A DNA stretch of 64,000 nt, taken from positions 1-64,000 of the forward strand of contig CDMY01000201.1 of the NCBI GenBank assembly GCA_001179505.1, in the 5' to 3' direction. Both the position numbers and the translations under genes were made by a program. The notes under the pieces are model-generated. The model was not told the origin of the DNA and ran no database searches. It worked only from the letters and a program-made list of their open reading frames with translations. Every line of letters starts with the position of its first letter. Position 1 is the stretch's first letter. Source of the DNA: Vitrella brassicaformis CCMP3155 (Eukaryota; Protista; Chromerida). Below are positions 8,401 through 20,100 of the stretch, one piece after another.

Positions 8401-9229
8401 ATCACGTGCCAACACCAAGGTCACCATCCCGCCGCCGCCCGTCCCCTCTGACTCGCCCGACTCTCCCGTGCGTCTCCATTCGCGAGGGCTGCGACGATGC
8501 ACCACGTCTGAGCAGCACACAGGGGCGTGCAGCCCGATGAGACCGTTGGGACTGCTGACACCTGCGAGTCGGTCGTTTTATCGGGGCGGTGAAGGGGGCG
8601 GTGGTGCGCCGGTGTTTCTGAACCGGCTGGCCTCCTTCCCTGCGGGCGTGCGTGGTGGTGGTGGGGATAAAGAGCCGACAACGCCCATATCCTTCTCTGT
8701 CCTCAAGCGGCGCAGCAAGCCCAAGGCCTCCCGCCCGAACTCCCTGCCCCCGAGGTCACGGATGCGTCCTCGCCCCCTGCTTATCCCCTACCATCGTCAG
8801 CTCAGCGCAGCGCAGAAGAGGTCTCCCGACCAGCAGCCTGCGAGTTCGAAGGTGGTCGAGAGCGGGGCCAGTGGTGGTGGTGGGCTGCCGTCTCCCACCT
8901 CGGTGTGTGAGCGGGGGTCGTGCTCGTCCGAAGACTCCACTGCGGCCCGCACGGGCTGCATCTCAGCGTCGGCCTCGCCGCTGGCGTCACCCACTGACGC
9001 CCAGACGGAGGCCACACCCGTGCTGCAGACGGCGGACAGAGCGGGAGAGAATGCCACGCCGACGTTCCCTCTGCTGCCGACTTCCCATGAGTCGAACGCG
9101 TCGTTCCCCGGTGCGGATGGTGCCACCATCACACTGGTGCACTGCGGTGGTGGTGCTGTTTGGAGGGAGAGGGCGAGCAGCCTGGTGGGTCGGTGCATCG
9201 AGAGCATGAGGGGGGAGAGGAAGGAGTGA
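5448..9229 (+). CDS. Inositol polyphosphate kinase (IPK family, IPMK/IP6K-like) with a very long low-complexity C-terminal extension; multi-exon
   Basis: YQVGGH, MLEDLVDGFRRPCVLDLKMG (PxxxDxKxG), TTTSHSLGFR, SSLL, IRLIDFAN, YLFGLKNL. Intron 7351-7436 (GTAAGC...CAG) links ORF 6588-7361 to ORF 7436-9229 in phase 1. Confidence 0.9.
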
Positions 9230-9439
9230 GGTGGTGCACTGCAAGTGATGGATGGGCTGATATGATGGGCTGGTGATTGATTGGTGATATCGATCTATCG
9301 TTTTGTAGAAGGGAGGGAGTGAGGGTATGTATGGCGCACCCACCGCACAGAAGTGTTTTCTCTGAAAGGTGGGTGGCATCCATGGCACTTTTTCGTTGGT
9401 TGGTGGGTTGGCTTGGTCTGTGGGCACAGTGAGGCCCCC

Positions 9440-11800
9440 TCCCCTCCCGCAGCAAGCAAGAGTGATGGATGATAGGCGGGAGGGAGGGAGGGAGGGGCCT
9501 CACAATGTGCCCACACAAAGGGGAGGGAGGCAGGGAGGGAGACAAGGAAAGCTGCAGGGAGCGACAGAGAGAGAGCTGCCCGCCTGTCTGCCGTGTATGT
9601 CTGTGTCTAATTTGAGTAGTGTCGTCTATGGCTGGCTGGCAGGCAGGCAGGCAGGCTGCAGCTGATGAGAGAGCGATGATATCCTGCAATTAACAGTGGG
9701 TGCATTTGTATGTCGTGTGTGTGTGTGTGTGTGTGTATGTGGGCACCAACTGCACAGACACACGCGAGCGCAGAGCAGAGCAGGCGGCATCTGACTCACT
9801 GGGTGAGTAGGGGAGGGAGGGAGTCTGTCTGTCTGTGTGTCTGTCATCAATCTAACCATGGGTATGTTTGTACGTATGCGACAGACGGACAGGTGCAATC
9901 GCCGTCCGTCAAAAGTCTTGCTTGGCTGGCTCTGTAACCACACCACACCTACACCCCCTAGGGCGCCTTTCTGGCCTCATTTGTATGCCCACACACGTCC
10001 TGCTGCAGACTGCGGGACGGCGAACGAACGAGTGCATTGTGCATGCCTATGTGTATTCCTGCCTTCTACCGACTGACTGACAGTCAATGGCTTTTCCTGC
10101 TGTCGTGCCGTGCCGTGCTGTGTCGTGAAATGTGCTCGTGCTTACGCTTTCTCTCTCTCTTGACCACACACACACACACACACACCCTCACGCACACCAA
10201 CTCACTCACTCACCTTCTGCCCATTTGCTTGTACAGGTAAAGTAATCCGCTATCTCTCGTCCTCCCACAATTTTGACGAAAAGGCCCCCACTCAGCCGCA
10301 CGGGCTGGCTGGGGGCGTGTTTCTTCGTCACCATGCGTGTGTGTGTGCGCGTGTGTGCGTGTGTATGTGTGTGTGTGCGACTCTCATGTGTATGCCGTGC
10401 TATCGGCTCTGTCTGTATGGATGTATGGCTGTGTCGGTCGGTGTGTCGGGCATTGATGTGTGTGTATTCATTCATCAATCTGTCGCTCGCTGGCAGAGGT
10501 ACGTGTGCCTGGCTATCCCTCCCCCGTTGCTTCGCTTCACACTGGCCGGCCGGCCCTTCCATTCCTCTCTCGTCTCGCGCTCTGCACACCTGCATGGATG
10601 GATGGATCCCATGTCATGATGGATGCCATCCATCCATGTATGTGTGCTGTTCAAGTGCTCGCATCTCCCTCTCTCTCTATGTGGGTGCCTTCCTGTCTGC
10701 CCTGCCTGCAGTGGGTGAGGGAGTGGTCAGATGGATCTTCTCCTGAGTGTGATTATTGTGTCCCTCCGTGTGTGTGTGAGTGTGTGCGTGACAATTTTGA
10801 CTTGCACGCTGGATGGTTGACTGACTGGATGCCGTGTGGTGTGCGGACGGGTGGTGGAAGAGCCACCGCGCGCAGTGTACGATACAAAGATAAGCAGGCA
10901 GACAGGGAGGAGGAGGGAAGCGATGTGTATGCGATGGAGTCTGTCTGGAACGACGCTGTTTTTTTGCTTTTCTAGTCTTTGGACGGCCCGGTGACCTACG
11001 CGTGTATGTGTGTGAGCGAGCCGTGCCCTGCCCCCATTTTCCCGCCTTGACCGTCGCGAGCGGAGGGCGCATTGGGGTTTTTTGGCCAATCGATCGAGGC
11101 AGCCAGGCTAGCGATGCAGGCAGGCAGGCAGGTTATATGGACAGATATGGACGGAAACAGGAGGACCTCGTGTGAGTGGAAATGACTGGTGCATTGAGGT
11201 GCCGGAGGATGGCGGTTAGCGAGACGACCTGACACACACACGCATACGCACACCAACCACACACGCAGAGAGAGAGGGGGGGGGCCAACTTGAGGGGCAG
11301 AGAGGAGAGACACATCGGATGGAGGTCTGTCTTCTTCAGTCAGAATGTATTCTAACCGGCTGTGTGCCGCGTGCTGCTGCGGCACTGTGTGGGATGAGTG
11401 GTAGGAGGGAGTTACTTACTTGTGCGTGGGTGCGTGGGACTAACCCGCCCACTGCCCACGCCCCCGCGCACCGAGGTCATCGAGTTTTTGTTTGTGTCAC
11501 TTTTGGCGGGAGGGATCGGATCCTCTGGACGGAGTCTTTGTCAACTGGCTGGCTTGGTGGATGCATACGTGCATGCAGGGGCAGGTATACGTCATGAATG
11601 TGTGGTTTGTGTGTGTGTGTGTGTGTTTTGACCCCCAACAAACCCACCCACCCCCCCACCATGTACCAACCATGTTTTGTGAGTGGATTTGTCGCGTGTT
11701 GTGCGCTGTGCCTGCTGCGGGTGCGTGTGTGGCAGTACCTCCCTCCCTCCCCTGTCTCTGCATATCGTCATATGCTGTGTGTCTGTGTGTGTATGTGTGT
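9440..11800. repeat. Microsatellite-rich region without a supportable CDS, between convergent genes: (GT)n, (CA)n, (GGCA)n, (GGAG)n, (GGAT)n
   Basis: The ORFs here translate to VCVC/THTH repeats. The same repeat types fill most introns in the window. Confidence 0.7.
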
Positions 11801-11959
11801 GCGCCCGGCCCGTGCTGTGTCGATAGCTGGCTGACTTGCCTTGCCTTCACTCACTGGATGAACGATGCAAATGACTGCAGTAGTGACCTCATCTCACCTC
11901 ACATCACCTGTGATATACCTGACCGATCGTCATATGCTGTCGGTGTACATGTTTGTTCC

Positions 11960-12063
11960 CTCGGCTGATGTCTATCGTCCTTCACCCACACACCTCAGTG
12001 CAGCTGTGCGTCGGCAGCTTCACTGATGGGGGTCGGGTGCTGTGCAGATAGACATCAGCCGAG
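11960..12063. other. Long fold-back inverted repeat (17-bp perfect outer stem plus inner stem)
   Basis: CTCGGCTGATGTCTATC (11960-11976) is the exact reverse complement of GATAGACATCAGCCGAG (12047-12063); inner pairs TCAGTG/CACTGA and AGCTG/CAGCT. Confidence 0.85.
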
Positions 12064-12607
12064 AAGACCTTTAGCGCTAGAGTGCAGCCATGCTGTGCCG
12101 TGTGTGTCGCTGACTGCTGGATAAGTGGATCGATGGATGGATGGACCGGTGGATGCAGTGGCTGATCACGGACGTGTGTGACGTGTGACGTGGTGGTGCA
12201 TTTTTTCCGTGACGTGAGCTGGCTTTCCCGTTACTGCAGGTGTGTTGCCTTCATGTGACATTCGTGTCTCATGTCTGTCGACGTGGACGTGTTAGTTCTT
12301 TCCGGCCGGCCAAACAAAAGGGAAAATCTGGGCCGGCCAAAACGAAACATCTGGGGAAATGAAATGTCTGTGGGTGCCATGCATGGTGGATAAAGAATCG
12401 CTTGGGTGCAATGCCACGCAAACCATAGGCATCAACGAAAACGGGCAGGCGGGGTGGCCGATTCAACCCCGGTGGACCCCCTTTCTCACACAGACAAGCC
12501 AAAAGAAATGAACAGAACATGCCAACAGAACACTTGTCTCCCCTCCTCTCCCTCTCCCTCTGTGTGTGTGGGGGCTGGTGGTAGTGTGGTGCGAAGTCAG
12601 GGCAGGG

Positions 12608-13379
12608 CTAGAGTCCGCCCTCAGCCTCCTCGAGTTCCTCGAGGGTCATGGCCTTCTTGCCGTCTTCGCAGGGCTCGGTGACGAACTTGCCTTCGCCCCC
12701 TGCAGGATTCGGCACCATGCAGCCGTACTCCTGCACACACACACACACACACGCACGCACGCACGCAATATGGTGGCGGGCGGGGGGACTTGTGTGTGTG
12801 TGTGTCTGATCTGACCATGTCGAGGTCGCTGGCTACTCCGCCGATGGCGTAGATGGGCTCGGCCTTCTCGTCAGTGTCCTTCAAGAAAGCCTTGCACGTC
12901 TGTAGAAATGACATGTCATGTGGAGGGAAAAGGGGAGCAAAACAACTACATAGGTATCTATCGTGTGTTTGAATTCGTTAACCCACCTTGACGTCGCTCG
13001 AGCTCGTCGTCATCTGCAGGCCAGCGCATCCATCCATCCATCCATCAGTACCTCGACAGATCTGTCCATATACCCATCTTACCTCGCACTGCTTGCACTT
13101 GAGGATCTTGCAGTTGGATTTGACCGTTGAAGCCGAGGGCTTGCCGCGGCGGCCCTTGACGACCGTGAAGCCCTCCTCGACCTTCGGTTCCTCCTTTCAG
13201 GCGGCCAGCTGCAGATGGCGGTCGGTTTCGGTGCGCAGGAAGCAGACCGCCTCGCCGTCGAGCATGCTGCACTTCCCGCCCTCCTGGGTGAAGACGTGGG
13301 CGGTGGTGGTGGTGGTGGCGAAGAGGAGGATGGTCATGAGGGCGAGGGAGAGGACCATGGTGGTGCTGAGGCTCGACAT
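12608..13379 (-). CDS. Secreted Cys-rich protein of 176 codons with an in-frame UGA at codon 61 (13197-13199); exons 13379-13083, 13013-12987, 12899-12816, 12730-12608
   Basis: Signal peptide MSSLSTTMVLSLALMTILLFATTTTTA. After TGA the same frame continues KEEPKVEEGFTVVKGRRGK...CKILKCKQCE and splices in phase 0 through three more GT-AG exons to TAG at 12608-12610. Confidence 0.75.
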
Positions 13380-13530
13380 TCTCAAATGTACGGGAGGGAA
13401 TACGAGAGGGAACGCAACGATGACTGAAGAAACGACTAAGATGGTGATGGGGGTTTCTGATGGACTGATGATGGGGGCGTTTTTGTTTTGGCCAGGAATT
13501 CTCGCCAGAAGCGCGCACTAGTAGTGAAGG

Positions 13531-15956
13531 ATGGAGGAGCACGTCCCGTCATCCGGAGGACCGCCCCCTTTCGCGGTGCCCGCCGGTGGGCAGAAGAAGA
13601 AGCAGATCTCCACTCAATCTGCGTCCATTCGATTCGTGTTGTTCCATCTCTTTCTCTCTGTGTGCTCCTTCCGTGTGCGGACGTCAGGCGGGCATCATCA
13701 CCTGGCGGCCTACACCGTGTCATCCCCGCAGCCACAGCAAGCACCAGCCTCTCAGCCCGTGACACCTTCAAGGGTGAGCGATGCCATTCACCACAAGCGG
13801 CCTAGGCACATCCCATGAGTGAGTGCCCGCATCTGAGTTCGTTCCTCTGATTTGGTTTGGTTTGGTGTGATGCGATGCGGTGCGATGCAGGTGCCTGTGC
13901 ACCTGGACCCCCTGCAGTCGTCATCGCCCATCAGCGCCGCGCCGGAGCGGCCCTCGTTGTCGCGAGTGCGGCGTGAGGTGCACCAGAGGAGGTACAAGAC
14001 TGCCATACAGATGTGCGAACAGGCCCTACAGGTGAGGGAGGGAGGGAGTGAGTCGGGGCAGGGCGGGGTAAGGTTGATTGATGCGTTTATTGCTGCTGCT
14101 GCATTGTGTTGTTGTATGTGTGTGGTCGATGGGTGGGTGGGTGCAGTCGGGTGGTGCGGGCAGTCAGTTGGCGCCGACTGAGGTGATAGCGTGGCACACC
14201 GTACGCATCTACTGCCTGCTCAAGCGACAGGTGCGCCATGCCTGCCTGAGGACACTGGCTGCATACTCTAACTTACATGACAGGTGGGGTGGATGGTGCA
14301 TGCCTGTCTGTCTGCCTGGCTGTCTGGCTGTTTGTTCGTTTGGCCTGCAGGAGTACCAACAGGCGGATGAAGCACTGGCACGCCTCGGGTGAGCTAGGAG
14401 AGAATTCATTCTTCCTCTGAGGAATGAGGGACGTCACTCACTCTTCTATCTATCTATATCTCTGCGGGCGGGCGGGCGACAGGTCGTTTGAGGCCCCGAA
14501 ATGGCGATACGAGCAGCACCCAGACCTATACCCGTACGCACGAACGAACGACATACTCACACCCACCTTCCCACCCACCATGGTCTTTTCATCCGTGCAG
14601 TGGCCAATCAGGCTCGTTCGTGCCCTTCGTTCTCCGTCAGCTGTCAGCTGTGGCGCCGTATTTGGCCAACCGGCCGCAGGTGACCCTCGACCGCCTGACT
14701 GAGCTGCAGACGCTGTGCGTGCAGCACCACACCGACCACACCGACAGTGAAAAGGCCAGGCAGCTGTGGCTGGACCGGGAGATCGCCGTCATCTGCCTTA
14801 TCGCCGAGGTGCACTGCCATCCCGCCCTGCAGAACTTCCCGGTACATCTGACAAAGAGAGAGAGGTGTGTGTGTGTGTGTGTGTGTGAGGGGGGTACACA
14901 TGCGAGTGTCCGTCTGCTCGTGTGTGACCAGGAGGCCATCAGGGTTCTGCAGCGGGCCCTTGAGCTAAGGCCCCGTGACCGAGGCACATTGTCAATGCTG
15001 GGCAGAGTCTCCCTGCAGGTTAGCAACCGCATCAGAAGCTAGACTCTCTCCACATGTCGCTGGTTGTTCACACACACAGTTGGGTGCGGTTGAGTCAGCG
15101 GAGGATTACTTCGGTCTCGACGAGTGCCTCGCAGAGAAGGACTCAGCCCTCGTCCGCGCAAACAAGTGAGCCCCCCATGAACTCCCACCCGCCCCTCCCA
15201 CCTGCCCTGCACAAACACCCACACATCACACTAGAATGAATGAATCGCTTTGCCATCCATGTGTGCAGCGGCCACCATGCTTTAGCGAGCCAGGACTATG
15301 CCACCGGCGTCAAGGAGTTCGAGGAGAGCAAACAGCTGGCGGAGGCGACACTGCAGCAGCACATCAATGCCGCAAGGGCCGTCCTCCCGGGCGGACCCGA
15401 ACCTGCTGACCAGGCCAAGATCGCACGCGCGTCGCAGGCGTGTGCGACGGCTGCCAATAACCTGGCTGTGGCGCACTTGTAAGCAGACGGCGAGAGATGG
15501 GAGGGTGCACATGACATGAAGGGCATTCTCTGGTTCGTTGATTCATTCAGTTACGACAAAAACTTGCCGAGGGCGAAGGAGGTGCTGGAGAACTCACTGT
15601 GGGCCCAGCCGGTAAGTGAGAGAGGCATCCCATCCGTCCGTCAAATCACCACGCCACCACACACCCAAGTGGCCGCTGTGTGTCTGCAGGACGTGATGGG
15701 CCTGACCAACAATGGCGTCATAGCGCCCGCCGTCAAGAACCTGCTGTCCTTCTGGGAGTTCGACCGCGACAAGAGTCACACCACTTCCGCCCTGCAGGAG
15801 CTGATATCGTCAACGTGCAACGAGGACGTGCAGGTGTGGGAGTCGCTCAAGACACAGCAGGGCCAGGGCGGGCAGCCCGGTGCTGCGGGGAGGGTGGCCA
15901 TGGGCAGCCCGCCTAGACAGGCCGTAGGCATACCCGTCGTCGGACAGGCCCTCTGA
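13531..15956 (+). CDS. TRAPPC12: TRAPP complex subunit 12 (TTC15/TRAMM)-like TPR protein; multi-exon
   Basis: VPFVLRQLSAVAPYLANRPQVTLDRL, TLSMLGRVSLQLGAVESAEDYF, ANNLAVAH and NLLSFWEF correspond to the TRAPPC12 TPR-region motifs (VPFSMR, GIGRISLQIGD, NNAAVC, NLTTMYEL). Confidence 0.8.
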
Positions 15957-17193: not shown

Positions 17194-20100
17194 TCACTCC
17201 TGGTCATACTTGGCGATAATGTCGTTATATCCCTCCAGCAGCGGCACCCCTGTCAGCCGGGCGATCTCATTCCGACACGCAATCGCCTCCCGCAGCCCCT
17301 CCCCCCTCCCCCACGACCCTCGCACATAGAACAACACACCCTCCGGGCCGTTGCCTCCAAGCGTCACACCAAACGCACACCGACTCGATGAGAAACGAAT
17401 GCCGAGGGCCGGGGGTTTCGCCTCGGCCGTGGGTGGGGGCTCCGACAGCAGCAGGAGGGCGGAGAACTGCGGCAGGAGCCTCTTGAGCTGGGGCAGCACC
17501 TCGTTGGCCGTCACGGCGATCTGCCGACGGTGTGGCTGCGGGGGCAGTGGAGGGGGCTGGTCCAAGAACTCGGCATAGCCCGTCACGTGTGGGGCCTTGT
17601 CGCCGGTGAAGAGGTTGCGCCTCGCGATAGCCGCCTTGAGCGACCCCTGCACCGCCCCCAGGCACCCACCGATCGCCCCCTCACCCAGCGGGATGCTCAT
17701 GCTCTCCGTCAGCAGCTGAATGCCATTGGTCGGGTCGAGGAGGAAAGGTGCCGCACGGTCGGTGTCCCACGAGAGAGACAGGGGAGGCCCCGCACGACCC
17801 ATGGCCACCAGCTGGGCGCCGTACAGGCTGTTCAGGCCCTCTATGTAGGCGTTGGCAATCGCGGCCGCATACCTCTTCCTCTGGTAAGGGAGTGGCGCAT
17901 CCGCCCGTGGGGTCAGCCGTGGCTGCTTGCGTTGCGATGACGGCTCGGGCAGGAGGCGTGAGCTCACGAGGCTGGCCGGTGGCGCCACGGCCTTTCTCTT
18001 GCGATTGTCTCTGTCTGGCGTCGCCTTCCTCCCCATCTGTATTCTCGGAGGAGTGGCCGGTGGCGGCGGCATGGGGCTCTCTCGCTGGACCATCGAATCG
18101 GGCACGGCAGGGTCGGACGGGTCGCGGAGGCGCTTCCCTCTGCCGGGCCGCATCTGTCGGGCTCTTGCGGCCTTGGTCGGCCCTGCAGACGACGAGAGTA
18201 GGCGGCTGTCTCGTGACATGGCCACATAGTCGCACGCAGGGTCATACTCGCCATAGACGTTGATGCGCCGGTCGTCGAGGAGCTCCTCGTGGCCCTCGAC
18301 GGGCGGCATGCACTTGGGCGCCCCCATGTCGTTGCGAATGGCCACCGCCTCGATCAGCGACCGCTTGATGGCGGCGGGGTCGTGGTACTCCTCCGGCTTG
18401 ACCTTGAGCCCCGCAAGCATCACTGGCTTGACGTGCTCCGGCCACGCAGTCGACAGCATGGTAGTCGGACACGCGCTTTGCCGGTCCCAGGACATGGCCA
18501 GCATCCCCGGACGGCCGTAGTGCTCCCGCAGGGCCGCGATGTATGCCGCCGCCACCAGGGCGGCGTAGGCCTTCCGCTGCTCCCACTCGGCCGCGTCGTC
18601 GGCTCCAGGCAGCGGGGGCGTGTTTCGCTTGACGGGCATGGTTTTGTCGGAGCACTGCGAGTCAGAGAGGGGGGCGTTGTGCTCAGGCGGGCACAGCGGC
18701 ATGCACTCCGGGGTGAGGTCGTTGTCTGCAGGGTCGCCGTAGCCCAACACACCCGCATAGTCGACCGCCGGGATGCCTGCCTTCTCGGCGGCACGGTTGC
18801 GGTACTGAACGGCCACATGCAGCATCATCGTGGCCACGTCAATGGGGAGGGAGGAGCCGCGGACCGATGCCAGCCTGGAGAGTGTCGGGGGCAGCCGCAC
18901 ACGGACCTTGCGCAGGCTTACTTGGGGCACGCACTTGGTCACGTTCCAGGTGATGCCCAGGGGAGCTGATGCCTCGTCCACCTGCCCACCCAGCTGCTCC
19001 AAGTACGCCTGGTGCAGCGCGGCGATGAGCCCCTCGGCGGCCTCGGCACACTCGGCCTTGAAGGTGGTCTTGGGCCCCGGTGTGATCCTGGCATGACGCA
19101 GTGGGCTGCCGGTCTGCTGGCTGCCGGTCTGCTGGGCGGCCTCGAGCTTCTTCCTGTCCCTCTCTCGGTTGAAAATGGTCCTGTAGCAGACGGTGGAATC
19201 GTAGCCATAGCTCTCCTCCCACTCGTTGAGCACCGACTCGGCGCCGACGACCGTCGGCCACCCCTGTGTTGGGGCCAGCTCGTTTCGCCTCTCGATTGCC
19301 CATTTGAGCTGCTTGAAGAAGCTGGGCTGCCCCACCTCAGGCTCGCCCCCCGTGTACACGAGCACAGAGCCAGACGTCAGGTCCGGGGGTGCACCCCGGG
19401 TGTTGGCGCTCGTCTTGACGACGAATCGGCCGAACCTGCTCCTGTACTCGATGGCCAGATTGCGGCTCTCGGGGGGCACGTGGGAAAGGCATCTCTCGAC
19501 CAGTTTGTCGAAGTAGGTCTCGGCGAGTATTTGAAGGTAGGCGCGATGGCGGTCCGAGTGCAGTTCTGGACACAGGTGCGTGACGGGGTCGAGATGGTCG
19601 CCCTGTGGTGGGAAGGTCGACCGCGCTATCACGCCCTCAAGCTGGGACGCTGCCGGCGCCCTCTTCGCCAAGGGTGGCGAGGGCGGCTTGGCCAGCGGCT
19701 GCTGCTGCTGCGAGGGCGGCGGCAGCATCGACAGCCGGGGAGTCTGCCCCCTCGGCGATGGGTCTGGGGTGTTAGAGTGATGCTCTGGCGTGCCGCTGCC
19801 AGATATCGCGCGCTTCTTGGCCGCCCTCTCCTGCACGCCGCCACTGCTGTCGTCCCCCTCCTCCCCCTCCCCCCCTCTGCCCGCGACTGACCGTGCCCTC
19901 TTGCTGCCCAGAGAGAGATCGAACTCCTTGATGATTTCTTCATAGCCCACCAGGGGCGGCAGCATGTCGCTCATGACACTGTTCCGGTGGGCGATGGCGC
20001 GTTGCAGCGCACCCGCGGCGCCACACGTGTGGACGGAGAAGGACGCCAGCGCCGGCGAGCCCTCGAACTGCACGTGGAAGGTGGCCGTCAATGGGTCGTA

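What the first reader, a model, noticed from the sequence alone, without database searches (positions are those of the whole stretch)
12608..13379. Secreted Cys-rich protein with an in-frame UGA: candidate new selenoprotein or readthrough product
Seen in sequence: ATG 13379 opens a signal peptide, and codon 61 is TGA (13197-13199, context GCC GCC TGA AAG GAG). The same frame stays open with the same strong G/C third-position bias for 38 more codons to a perfect GTAAG donor, then continues through three phase-0 exons to TAG. The product is 176 aa with 8 Cys (including CKQC) and a dibasic KGRRGK site. The ORF track stops at this UGA and misses the gene. Other genes here end in TGA, so UGA is not generally reassigned. 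Established knowledge: apicomplexans encode lineage-specific selenoproteins, and some use non-canonical SECIS cores (GGGA in Toxoplasma). I recognise no known selenoprotein family here and found no canonical SECIS by eye in 12607-9230. Alternatives are programmed readthrough, a recent nonsense mutation or sequencing error, or a weak 54-nt in-frame intron (GCG|GTCTGC...TGAAAG|) that would remove the UGA.
Basis: partly seen in the sequence, partly recalled or inferred. Interest (0 to 1): 0.85.

Follow-up and report, generated by a model that had tools for sequence, protein, structure and literature searches.

The report
Expressed orphan gene with in-frame UGA
A small secreted-protein gene of the alga Vitrella brassicaformis really has a UGA stop codon in the middle of its reading frame, and the mature mRNA keeps it. 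No selenocysteine signal or relative was found, so it is most likely a recently broken gene that the public annotation papers over with an unsupported intron.

Summary
The window is Vitrella brassicaformis CCMP3155, scaffold CDMY01000201.1. On the minus strand a four-exon gene runs from ATG 13379 to TAG 12608, with TGA as codon 61 (13199-13197).

- **UGA is real and retained.** Spliced transcript contigs from at least two independent RNA studies, and a DNA contig, carry the TGA without any difference.
- **Exon structure is correct.**
- **Downstream sequence looks coding.** The 38 codons after the UGA have GC3 of 0.895, against 0.51 and 0.43 in the other two frames.
- **Public model is unsupported.** CEL93988.1 (154 aa) removes the UGA with a 66-nt "intron" (13247-13182). 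No transcript contig uses it, and the segment looks like coding sequence.

The selenoprotein reading is not supported. Rfam finds no SECIS anywhere on the transcript. My own scans give only one loose GUGA/CC hairpin, of a quality that chance produces about once per kb. The protein has no homologue in any search, so no Cys/Sec alignment is possible. The UGA lies in no redox motif, its context is not leaky, and no structure follows it.

My best reading is a young nonsense allele in an orphan secretory gene (about 0.45). Low-level readthrough, minor splicing of the 66-nt segment, or selenocysteine with an unrecognisable SECIS remain possible. The scan has already found SECIS-bearing selenoproteins elsewhere in this genome.

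The parts
13380..13510 (-). 5'UTR. Transcript contigs start at 13486 (L001, X1) or 13510 (L002). It contains no upstream ATG.
13083..13379 (-). Exon 1 coding part: signal peptide, 33 further residues, UGA codon 61, then 38 more in-frame codons up to the GTAAG donor.
   Evidence: continuous in RNA contigs
13197..13199 (-). In-frame TGA (codon 61). It is present in DNA and in mature spliced mRNA.
13182..13247 (-). 66-nt segment that the public model CEL93988.1 annotates as an intron (GTCTGC...CCGAAG). All transcript contigs retain it. GC by codon position is 0.68/0.41/0.82, which looks like coding sequence. It ends in AAG, whereas six RNA-confirmed introns nearby all end in CAG.
13014..13082 (-). 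Intron 1, 69 nt, phase 0.
12987..13013 (-). Exon 2 (27 nt). Its ATG opens the 77-aa ORF P0001 that gene callers report on the transcripts.
12900..12986 (-). Intron 2, 87 nt, phase 0. The joint is seen in three RNA runs.
   Evidence: (joint 12899/12987)
12816..12899 (-). Exon 3 (84 nt).
12731..12815 (-). Intron 3, 85 nt, phase 0. It carries a (CA)n/(GT)n microsatellite.
12608..12730 (-). Exon 4 coding part, ending in TAG at 12610-12608.
11663..12607 (-). 3'UTR of at least 945 nt, colinear and unspliced. Assemblies break at a microsatellite at 11594-11662. One contig (L001) runs on to 9547.
12432..12489 (-). The only SECIS-like candidate: GUGA core, 10-position helix with 3 unpaired bases, CC in place of AA, and a 3' GA. 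It is of chance quality and gets no Rfam SECIS score.
11960..12063 (-). Very stable single-copy hairpin in the 3'UTR (-63.3 kcal/mol, z = -7.19). It has no UGA/GA kink-turn core, so it is not a SECIS. Its role is unknown.

Best explanation
This is a lineage-specific (orphan) gene of Vitrella brassicaformis for a small acidic, Cys-containing secretory protein. It carries a premature UGA stop at codon 61.

**Shown.**
- The gene is transcribed head-to-head with a TPR-protein gene.
- It is spliced at three phase-0 introns.
- The mature mRNA keeps the UGA.

**Inferred.**
- Ribosomes start at AUG 13379 and make the signal peptide.
- With no SECIS on the message and no leaky context, they mostly terminate at the UGA. 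That gives a 60-aa precursor, or a peptide of about 31-33 aa with two Cys after signal-peptide cleavage.
- The 115 downstream codons still look like coding sequence because the nonsense change is young. Any full-length product would come only from trace readthrough.

The public 154-aa model hides the stop behind a 66-nt intron that the assembled RNA does not use.
For: - **TGA is real.** It is present without variation in DNA-type and RNA-type contigs of three studies and in three assembled transcripts.
- **No bypass by splicing seen.** No junction for the 66-nt or 54-nt intron occurs in any transcript contig. The 154-aa protein occurs only on the genome scaffold, while the 77-aa ORF of the UGA-retaining mRNA occurs on three transcript contigs.
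- **The 66-nt segment is not intron-like.** It has codon periodicity and an AAG end, unlike six confirmed introns nearby.
- **No SECIS.** Rfam at E <= 10 finds none on 8500-14000, on the 1-kb UTR alone, or on the best candidate alone. The strict scans found no candidate in the confirmed 3'UTR, and their two hits further downstream (CUGA and GUGA cores, no apical AA) matched the plus-strand control count. The loose scan gives one hit in the 3'UTR, where 0.98 per kb is expected from shuffles and 1.2-1.3 per kb is seen across the window.
- **UGA is a normal stop here.** The annotated neighbours (IPK gene at 9229, 2237-aa gene at 17194) end in TGA.
- **No readthrough marks.** The context CC-UGA-A has no significant downstream structure.
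- **The gene class fits.** It is an orphan with no homologue in 1.84 billion representatives, in the word-indexed searches or in metagenome contigs. It also has low-confidence folds. Fast-evolving, dispensable genes of this kind are the ones expected to carry loss-of-function alleles (inference).
- **A weak hint of decay.** GC3 is slightly lower after the UGA than before it (0.861 vs 0.967, Fisher P = 0.035). This is weakly compatible with relaxed constraint.
Against: - Apart from the UGA the gene is flawless: all splice sites are used, there is no frameshift, and the coding signature is strong right after the stop. A nonsense change would therefore have to be very recent.
- The mRNA is well represented in the assemblies even though three exon junctions lie downstream of the stop. 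In many eukaryotes that arrangement would trigger nonsense-mediated decay.
- All data sets are identical, so no allele with a sense codon has been seen.
- The organism does make selenoproteins, according to earlier notes of this scan that I did not verify.
- My SECIS negatives could not be calibrated on Vitrella's own SECIS elements.
Confidence: 0.45

Rival explanations
1. Minor-isoform rescue (exitron). The 66-nt segment 13247-13182 is spliced out of a minority of transcripts. That would give the public 154-aa secreted protein, while the dominant retained isoform is unproductive.
For: - The segment is GT..AG, a multiple of 3, and 66 nt long, close to the confirmed 69-nt intron 1. Its donor GTCTG keeps the G at position +5 seen in all six confirmed donors.
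- The public annotation chose this intron.
- Contigs drop rare variants, and 46 joints in the read layout were not displayed.
Against: - No transcript contig in three assemblies or three RNA-type runs shows the junction.
- The 154-aa product is recorded only from the genome scaffold.
- The acceptor is AAG in a purine-rich tract, whereas all six confirmed introns end in CAG. The segment has coding-like periodicity and 64% GC.
Confidence: 0.15
2. Translational readthrough. UGA-61 is decoded at a useful rate by a near-cognate tRNA (Trp, Cys or Arg), giving a 176-aa secreted protein together with the 60-aa product.
For: - The coding signature continues in the same frame immediately after the UGA (GC3 0.895, P = 9e-6).
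- The mRNA is abundant despite downstream exon junctions.
Against: - None of the known stimulators is present. The base after the stop is A rather than C or CUAG, and CC precedes the stop.
- The 120 nt after the stop fold no better than shuffles (z = -0.06).
- There are no homologues to show conservation of a readthrough extension.
Confidence: 0.12
3. A new lineage-specific selenoprotein. UGA-61 encodes selenocysteine, directed by a SECIS that departs from known forms, for example the GUGA/CC hairpin at 12489-12432, which starts 118 nt after the TAG.
For: - An in-frame UGA is retained in mRNA with coding sequence on both sides.
- Earlier notes of this scan report many SECIS-bearing selenoprotein genes in this genome, several with GUGA cores and one read with CC in place of AA. 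I did not verify these.
- The candidate hairpin has a GUGA...GA core with a possible U.U pair, a 10-position helix 2, CC at the expected distance, a 6-bp upper helix and a typical position in the 3'UTR.
Against: - Rfam's SECIS models give no hit at all, even when only the 111-nt candidate is searched at E <= 10.
- Hairpins of equal loose quality occur 0.98 per kb in shuffles and 1.2-1.3 per kb across the window.
- The candidate region folds no better than shuffles (z = +0.6), and its 3' GA is Watson-Crick paired in the minimum-energy fold. Its helix 1 is poor.
- The UGA is in no CxxU/UxxC-type motif, and there is no Cys homologue or any homologue.
- The models of the 77-aa C-terminal ORF (P0001) and of the public 154-aa protein are low-confidence. 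Neither contains the UGA position.
Confidence: 0.08
4. Two separate products. The 60-codon ORF acts as a long upstream ORF, and the functional protein is the 77-aa ORF from the exon-2 AUG (P0001), made by reinitiation or leaky scanning.
For: Gene callers report the 77-aa ORF on three transcript contigs. The frame is open from exon 2 to the TAG.
Against: - The 38 codons between the UGA and that AUG carry the same strong third-position bias in the same frame. A non-translated spacer would not.
- The 77-aa product would lack the signal peptide.
- Reinitiation after a 60-codon ORF is inefficient in eukaryotes (established knowledge).
Confidence: 0.05

Closest known systems
Lineage-specific apicomplexan selenoproteins (Plasmodium Sel1-Sel4, Toxoplasma-type with non-canonical SECIS cores)
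   Same: A small orphan protein of an alveolate with one in-frame UGA and no homologues outside the lineage. The organism appears to have selenocysteine machinery, according to earlier notes of this scan.
   Different: Those proteins were defined by a SECIS element in the 3'UTR, and here none is detectable. The comparison with those families rests on my own knowledge, not on a test here.
Premature-termination alleles or young unitary pseudogenes hidden by gene predictors with spurious short introns
   Same: A single in-frame stop in an otherwise intact, expressed gene. The public model (CEL93988.1) inserts a 66-nt in-frame GT..AG 'intron' exactly over the stop, and it is unsupported by RNA.
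   Different: No sense-codon allele or orthologue is available to prove that the stop is derived. There are no further disabling lesions.
Exitrons (alternatively spliced, coding-like internal parts of exons)
   Same: The 66-nt segment lies inside a coding exon, is a multiple of three and has coding features.
   Different: No spliced form has been observed in any assembled transcript.
Programmed stop-codon readthrough genes (UGA-CUAG type, or with a 3' stem-loop)
   Same: An in-frame UGA followed by a long open, coding-like extension.
   Different: The context is UGA-A with no structure downstream, and no conservation can be tested.

Membership tests
Eukaryotic selenoprotein gene | In-frame UGA present in the mature mRNA, with coding sequence on both sides | tested here: met
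Eukaryotic selenoprotein gene | SECIS element (kink-turn core A/G-UGA...GA, helix 2, apical AA/CC) in the 3'UTR | tested here: not met
   There is no Rfam SECIS hit at E <= 10 on the whole transcript, on the UTR, or on the best candidate. My own scans give only a chance-level hairpin. I could not calibrate on Vitrella's own SECIS elements.
Eukaryotic selenoprotein gene | Homologues with Cys or Sec aligned to the UGA | tested here: inconclusive
   No homologue of any kind was found. The only hits are spurious matches to bacterial SprB/PKD repeats.
Eukaryotic selenoprotein gene | Sec lies in a redox-type motif or fold | tested here: not met
   The context is LQLAA-U-KEEPK with no Cys within 14 residues. 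The models of the 77-aa C-terminal ORF (P0001) and of the public 154-aa protein are low-confidence; neither contains the UGA position.
Eukaryotic selenoprotein gene | Selenium incorporation into the product | not testable with these tools
   Needs 75Se labelling or mass spectrometry.
Programmed stop-codon readthrough | Leaky stop context and/or a stimulatory 3' structure | tested here: not met
   The context is CC-UGA-A. The downstream 120 nt have z = -0.06.
Programmed stop-codon readthrough | Extension conserved as coding sequence in relatives | tested here: inconclusive
   The coding signature is present, but there are no relatives to compare.
Intron / exitron over the stop (public model CEL93988.1) | Spliced junction present in RNA | tested here: not met
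   The junction is absent from L001-L003 and from the RNA-type contigs. The 154-aa product occurs only on the genome scaffold. Rare isoforms cannot be excluded from contigs.
Intron / exitron over the stop (public model CEL93988.1) | Splice signals like the local confirmed introns | tested here: not met
   The acceptor is AAG in a purine tract, against CAG in 6 of 6 confirmed introns. The donor GTCTG is acceptable.
Nonsense allele / young pseudogene | Stop present in genomic DNA and in transcripts of independent data sets | tested here: met
Nonsense allele / young pseudogene | A sense codon at this position in an allele or orthologue | not testable with these tools
   All runs are identical and no orthologue was found.

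The most novel reading that the evidence does not exclude
UGA-61 is decoded as selenocysteine in a Vitrella-specific secreted protein through a 3'UTR element that no current SECIS model recognises. Candidates are the degenerate GUGA/CC hairpin at 12489-12432 or, more remotely, the exceptionally stable hairpin at 12063-11960. This would be a new selenoprotein family with a new SECIS form in a free-living relative of apicomplexans.
Probability: 0.08. Interest if true: 0.75.

Novelty: new member of a known kind. Interest (0 to 1): 0.3.

Why it matters
As it stands, the finding mainly corrects an annotation. The public Vitrella protein A0A0G4EDB8 / CEL93988.1 rests on an intron that assembled RNA does not use, and the expressed mRNA carries a stop at codon 61.

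It also shows how gene predictors can hide in-frame UGAs behind short in-frame introns. That is relevant for anyone mining chromerid genomes for selenoproteins or recoding.

If translation past the UGA were shown, the locus would become a test case for SECIS-independent or non-canonical recoding in an alveolate that does use selenocysteine. On present evidence that is unlikely.

Tried and rejected
- **Sequencing or assembly error: rejected.** The TGA is identical in four runs of three studies and in three transcript assemblies.
- **The 54-nt intron (reader) and 66-nt intron (public model) as the main form: rejected.** RNA contigs are continuous across the segment and neither junction is found.
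- **Canonical or non-canonical SECIS: not found.** I ran four Rfam searches, an ungapped scan (11), constrained folding (12, 19, 36), and a loose scan with controls (41, 43).
- **The stable 3'UTR hairpin 12063-11960 as a SECIS: rejected.** It has no UGA/GA tandem in its internal loop on either strand.
- **Homologues: none.** Searches used the N-terminal 60 aa, exon 4 (self only), exhaustive phmmer with the 77-aa P0001, the 154-aa P0004, Pfam, the ESM Atlas, metagenome contigs and paralogues in the window. The phmmer search returned only SprB/PKD repeat proteins that share an NPxGGxG-like motif without the Cys, which I judged spurious.
- **Structure prediction: uninformative.** P0001 gave pLDDT 46.5, so I made no fold search.
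- **Literature: nothing.** I found no paper on chromerid selenoproteins.
- **Frameshift bypass: rejected.** The codon bias stays in frame 0.
- **Not done.** I had no positive control of the SECIS searches on Vitrella's own SECIS elements, because there was no route to those loci with the tools and caps. I had no raw-read view, because all runs were served as contigs. I made no search with the full 176-residue read-through sequence, because it has no reference and I did not type it.

Full report
**Where and what.** The window belongs to Vitrella brassicaformis CCMP3155 (assembly GCA_001179505.1, scaffold CDMY01000201.1).
- ATG is at 13379, and a hydrophobic signal-peptide-like start follows.
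- TGA is codon 61, at 13199-13197.
- Another 38 in-frame codons run to a GAG|GTAAG donor at 13083.
- Exons 13013-12987, 12899-12816 and 12730-12608 then end in TAG.
- The introns are 69, 87 and 85 nt, all phase 0.
- The conceptual product has 176 positions and 8 Cys.

**Is the UGA real, and is it in the mRNA?** Yes. I laid contigs of four public runs on 9000-14500.
- Two runs of one study (X1, X2) and one of another study (X7) behave as RNA: they carry splice joints in this gene and in the neighbouring plus-strand gene.
- X1 record 4 (1600 nt) and X2 record 12 (1550 nt) lie on 13486/13454-13083 without a single difference or gap. They skip to the small exons and then continue on 12723-11663.
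- X7 record 23 covers 13488-13083 in the same way.
- The unspliced, DNA-like X4 record 16 covers 12773-14500, again without differences.

They were fetched through the 77-aa downstream ORF: L001 and L002 from two JGI samples, and L003 from Logan run ERR558152.

**Is the part after the UGA coding?**
- Third-position GC is 0.967 before the UGA and 0.895 in the 38 codons just after it. It is 0.861 over all 115 downstream codons.
- The other two frames give 0.43-0.58 and the 3'UTR 0.54-0.57.
- The binomial probability of the post-UGA value is 9e-6 for the 38 codons and 4e-12 for all 115.

So the UGA sits inside sequence that is translated in this frame, or was until recently. This also argues against the idea that only the 77-aa ORF from the exon-2 AUG matters.

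**The public annotation.** The cluster of the 77-aa ORF also holds CEL93988.1 / UniProt A0A0G4EDB8, 154 aa. It reads ...DGEAV|EEGF..., which means it removes 13247-13182 (66 nt, GTCTGC...CCGAAG) as an intron, and the UGA with it.
- That protein is recorded only from the genome scaffold, never from a transcript contig.
- Six RNA-confirmed introns in this gene and its neighbour all end in CAG. The 66-nt segment ends in AAG within a purine tract, is 64% GC and shows codon periodicity of 0.68/0.41/0.82.

I conclude that the intron is most likely a predictor's device to avoid the stop. Contigs cannot exclude a rare spliced isoform.

**Selenocysteine?** Earlier notes of this scan report many selenoprotein genes with recognisable SECIS hairpins in this genome, often with GUGA cores. 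I did not verify them. If they hold, the machinery is there, and a true selenoprotein mRNA should carry a SECIS.

I found none.
- Rfam (all 4227 families, E <= 10, permissive filters) gave no SECIS hit on 8500-14000 on either strand, none on the 1-kb 3'UTR alone, and none at gathering threshold in the whole window.
- An ungapped core-and-helix scan and two constrained-folding scans over 12620-9400 gave nothing SECIS-like.
- A deliberately loose scan used A/G-UGA or GGGA cores, at least 8 pairs with up to 4 irregularities, and AA or CC at 9-14 nt. Its best hit is a GUGA...CC...GA hairpin at 12489-12432.

That hairpin does not stand up.
- Equally good hits occur 0.98 times per kb in shuffles of the UTR, and 1.2-1.3 per kb on both strands of the window.
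- Its region folds no better than shuffles (z = +0.6), with the 3' GA Watson-Crick paired in the minimum-energy fold.
- Rfam gives it no SECIS score even when it is searched alone.

The UGA is also in no redox-type motif: the context is LQLAA-U-KEEPK, and the nearest Cys is 15 residues away.

**Readthrough?** The stop context is CC-UGA-A, and the following 120 nt fold no better than shuffles (z = -0.06). Neither of the usual stimulators is present.

**Relatives.** There are none.
- The N-terminal 60 aa found no candidate.
- Exon 4 found only the 77-aa ORF itself.
- An exhaustive phmmer of that ORF against 1.84 billion representatives gave only two bacterial SprB/PKD repeat proteins. They share a Gly-rich motif but not the Cys, so I judge them spurious.
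- The 154-aa public protein found nothing either.
- Pfam, the ESM Atlas, metagenome contigs and the window itself also gave nothing.
- The predicted structures are low-confidence: pLDDT 46.5 for the 77 aa, and 0.35 for the Atlas model of the 154 aa.

The classical Cys/Sec alignment test therefore cannot be done, and the protein's function remains inferred only from its signal peptide and Cys content.

**UGA as an ordinary stop.** Both annotated neighbours end in TGA: the convergent IPK-domain gene at 9229 and the 2237-aa gene at 17194.

**Verdict.** The defining feature of a eukaryotic selenoprotein gene was tested and not met, and the features of programmed readthrough were not met either.

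The most economical explanation is a young nonsense allele in a dispensable orphan secretory gene, which yields a truncated 60-aa precursor. I put this at about 0.45. It is not higher for three reasons:
- The gene is otherwise immaculate.
- The mRNA is abundant despite three downstream exon junctions.
- No sense-codon allele exists to prove that the stop is derived.

Minor splicing of the 66-nt segment (0.15), readthrough (0.12), selenocysteine with an unrecognised SECIS (0.08) and a separate downstream product (0.05) remain open.

**Limits.**
- All runs were served as contigs, so rare isoforms, transcript ends and expression levels cannot be read.
- The SECIS negatives were not calibrated on Vitrella's own elements.
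- The 3' end of the transcript is uncertain: assemblies break at the microsatellite 11594-11662, and one contig continues to 9547.

Noticed in passing
window 11960-12063 (minus strand, 3'UTR of the gene): A single-copy, exceptionally stable hairpin with a perfect 17-19-bp basal stem (arms 11960-11976 / 12047-12063). The 114-nt fold is -63.3 kcal/mol with z = -7.19, and 0 of 200 shuffles fold as well. It has no kink-turn core, no Rfam hit and no other copy in the window. Its function is unknown.
   Followed up: partly
window 13182-13247: The public gene model CEL93988.1 / A0A0G4EDB8 (154 aa) annotates a 66-nt intron here that removes the in-frame TGA. No assembled transcript uses it. This is probably a general failure mode of the annotation at in-frame UGAs.
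   Followed up: yes
window 13380-13531: Head-to-head arrangement. The annotated start of the divergent TPR-repeat gene (468 aa, plus strand) is at 13531, and transcript contig L002 of the minus-strand gene starts at 13510. The two genes therefore share a very short bidirectional promoter region.
   Followed up: no
window 9547-12607: One transcript contig (L001, 3691 nt) and X7 record 22 run colinear from exon 4 down to 9547/9853. That reaches into the 3.4-kb space shared with the convergent IPK-domain gene, whose stop is at 9229. This is either a roughly 3-kb 3'UTR or overlapping convergent transcripts merged by unstranded assembly.
   Followed up: partly
window 9419-9515 and 10584-10647: Two further inverted-repeat hairpins in the same intergenic space. 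Both give weak, sub-threshold miRNA-family hits in Rfam (32.5 and 33.2 bits, far below gathering). They are probably composition or repeat effects.
   Followed up: no
window 9638-9656, 12126-12146, 14297-14335, 11594-11662, 12734-12808: Short (GGAT)n/(CCAT)n and (CA)n microsatellites at which hundreds of unrelated contigs join and assemblies break. They explain the depth spikes and the false 'joints' in the read layout.
   Followed up: partly
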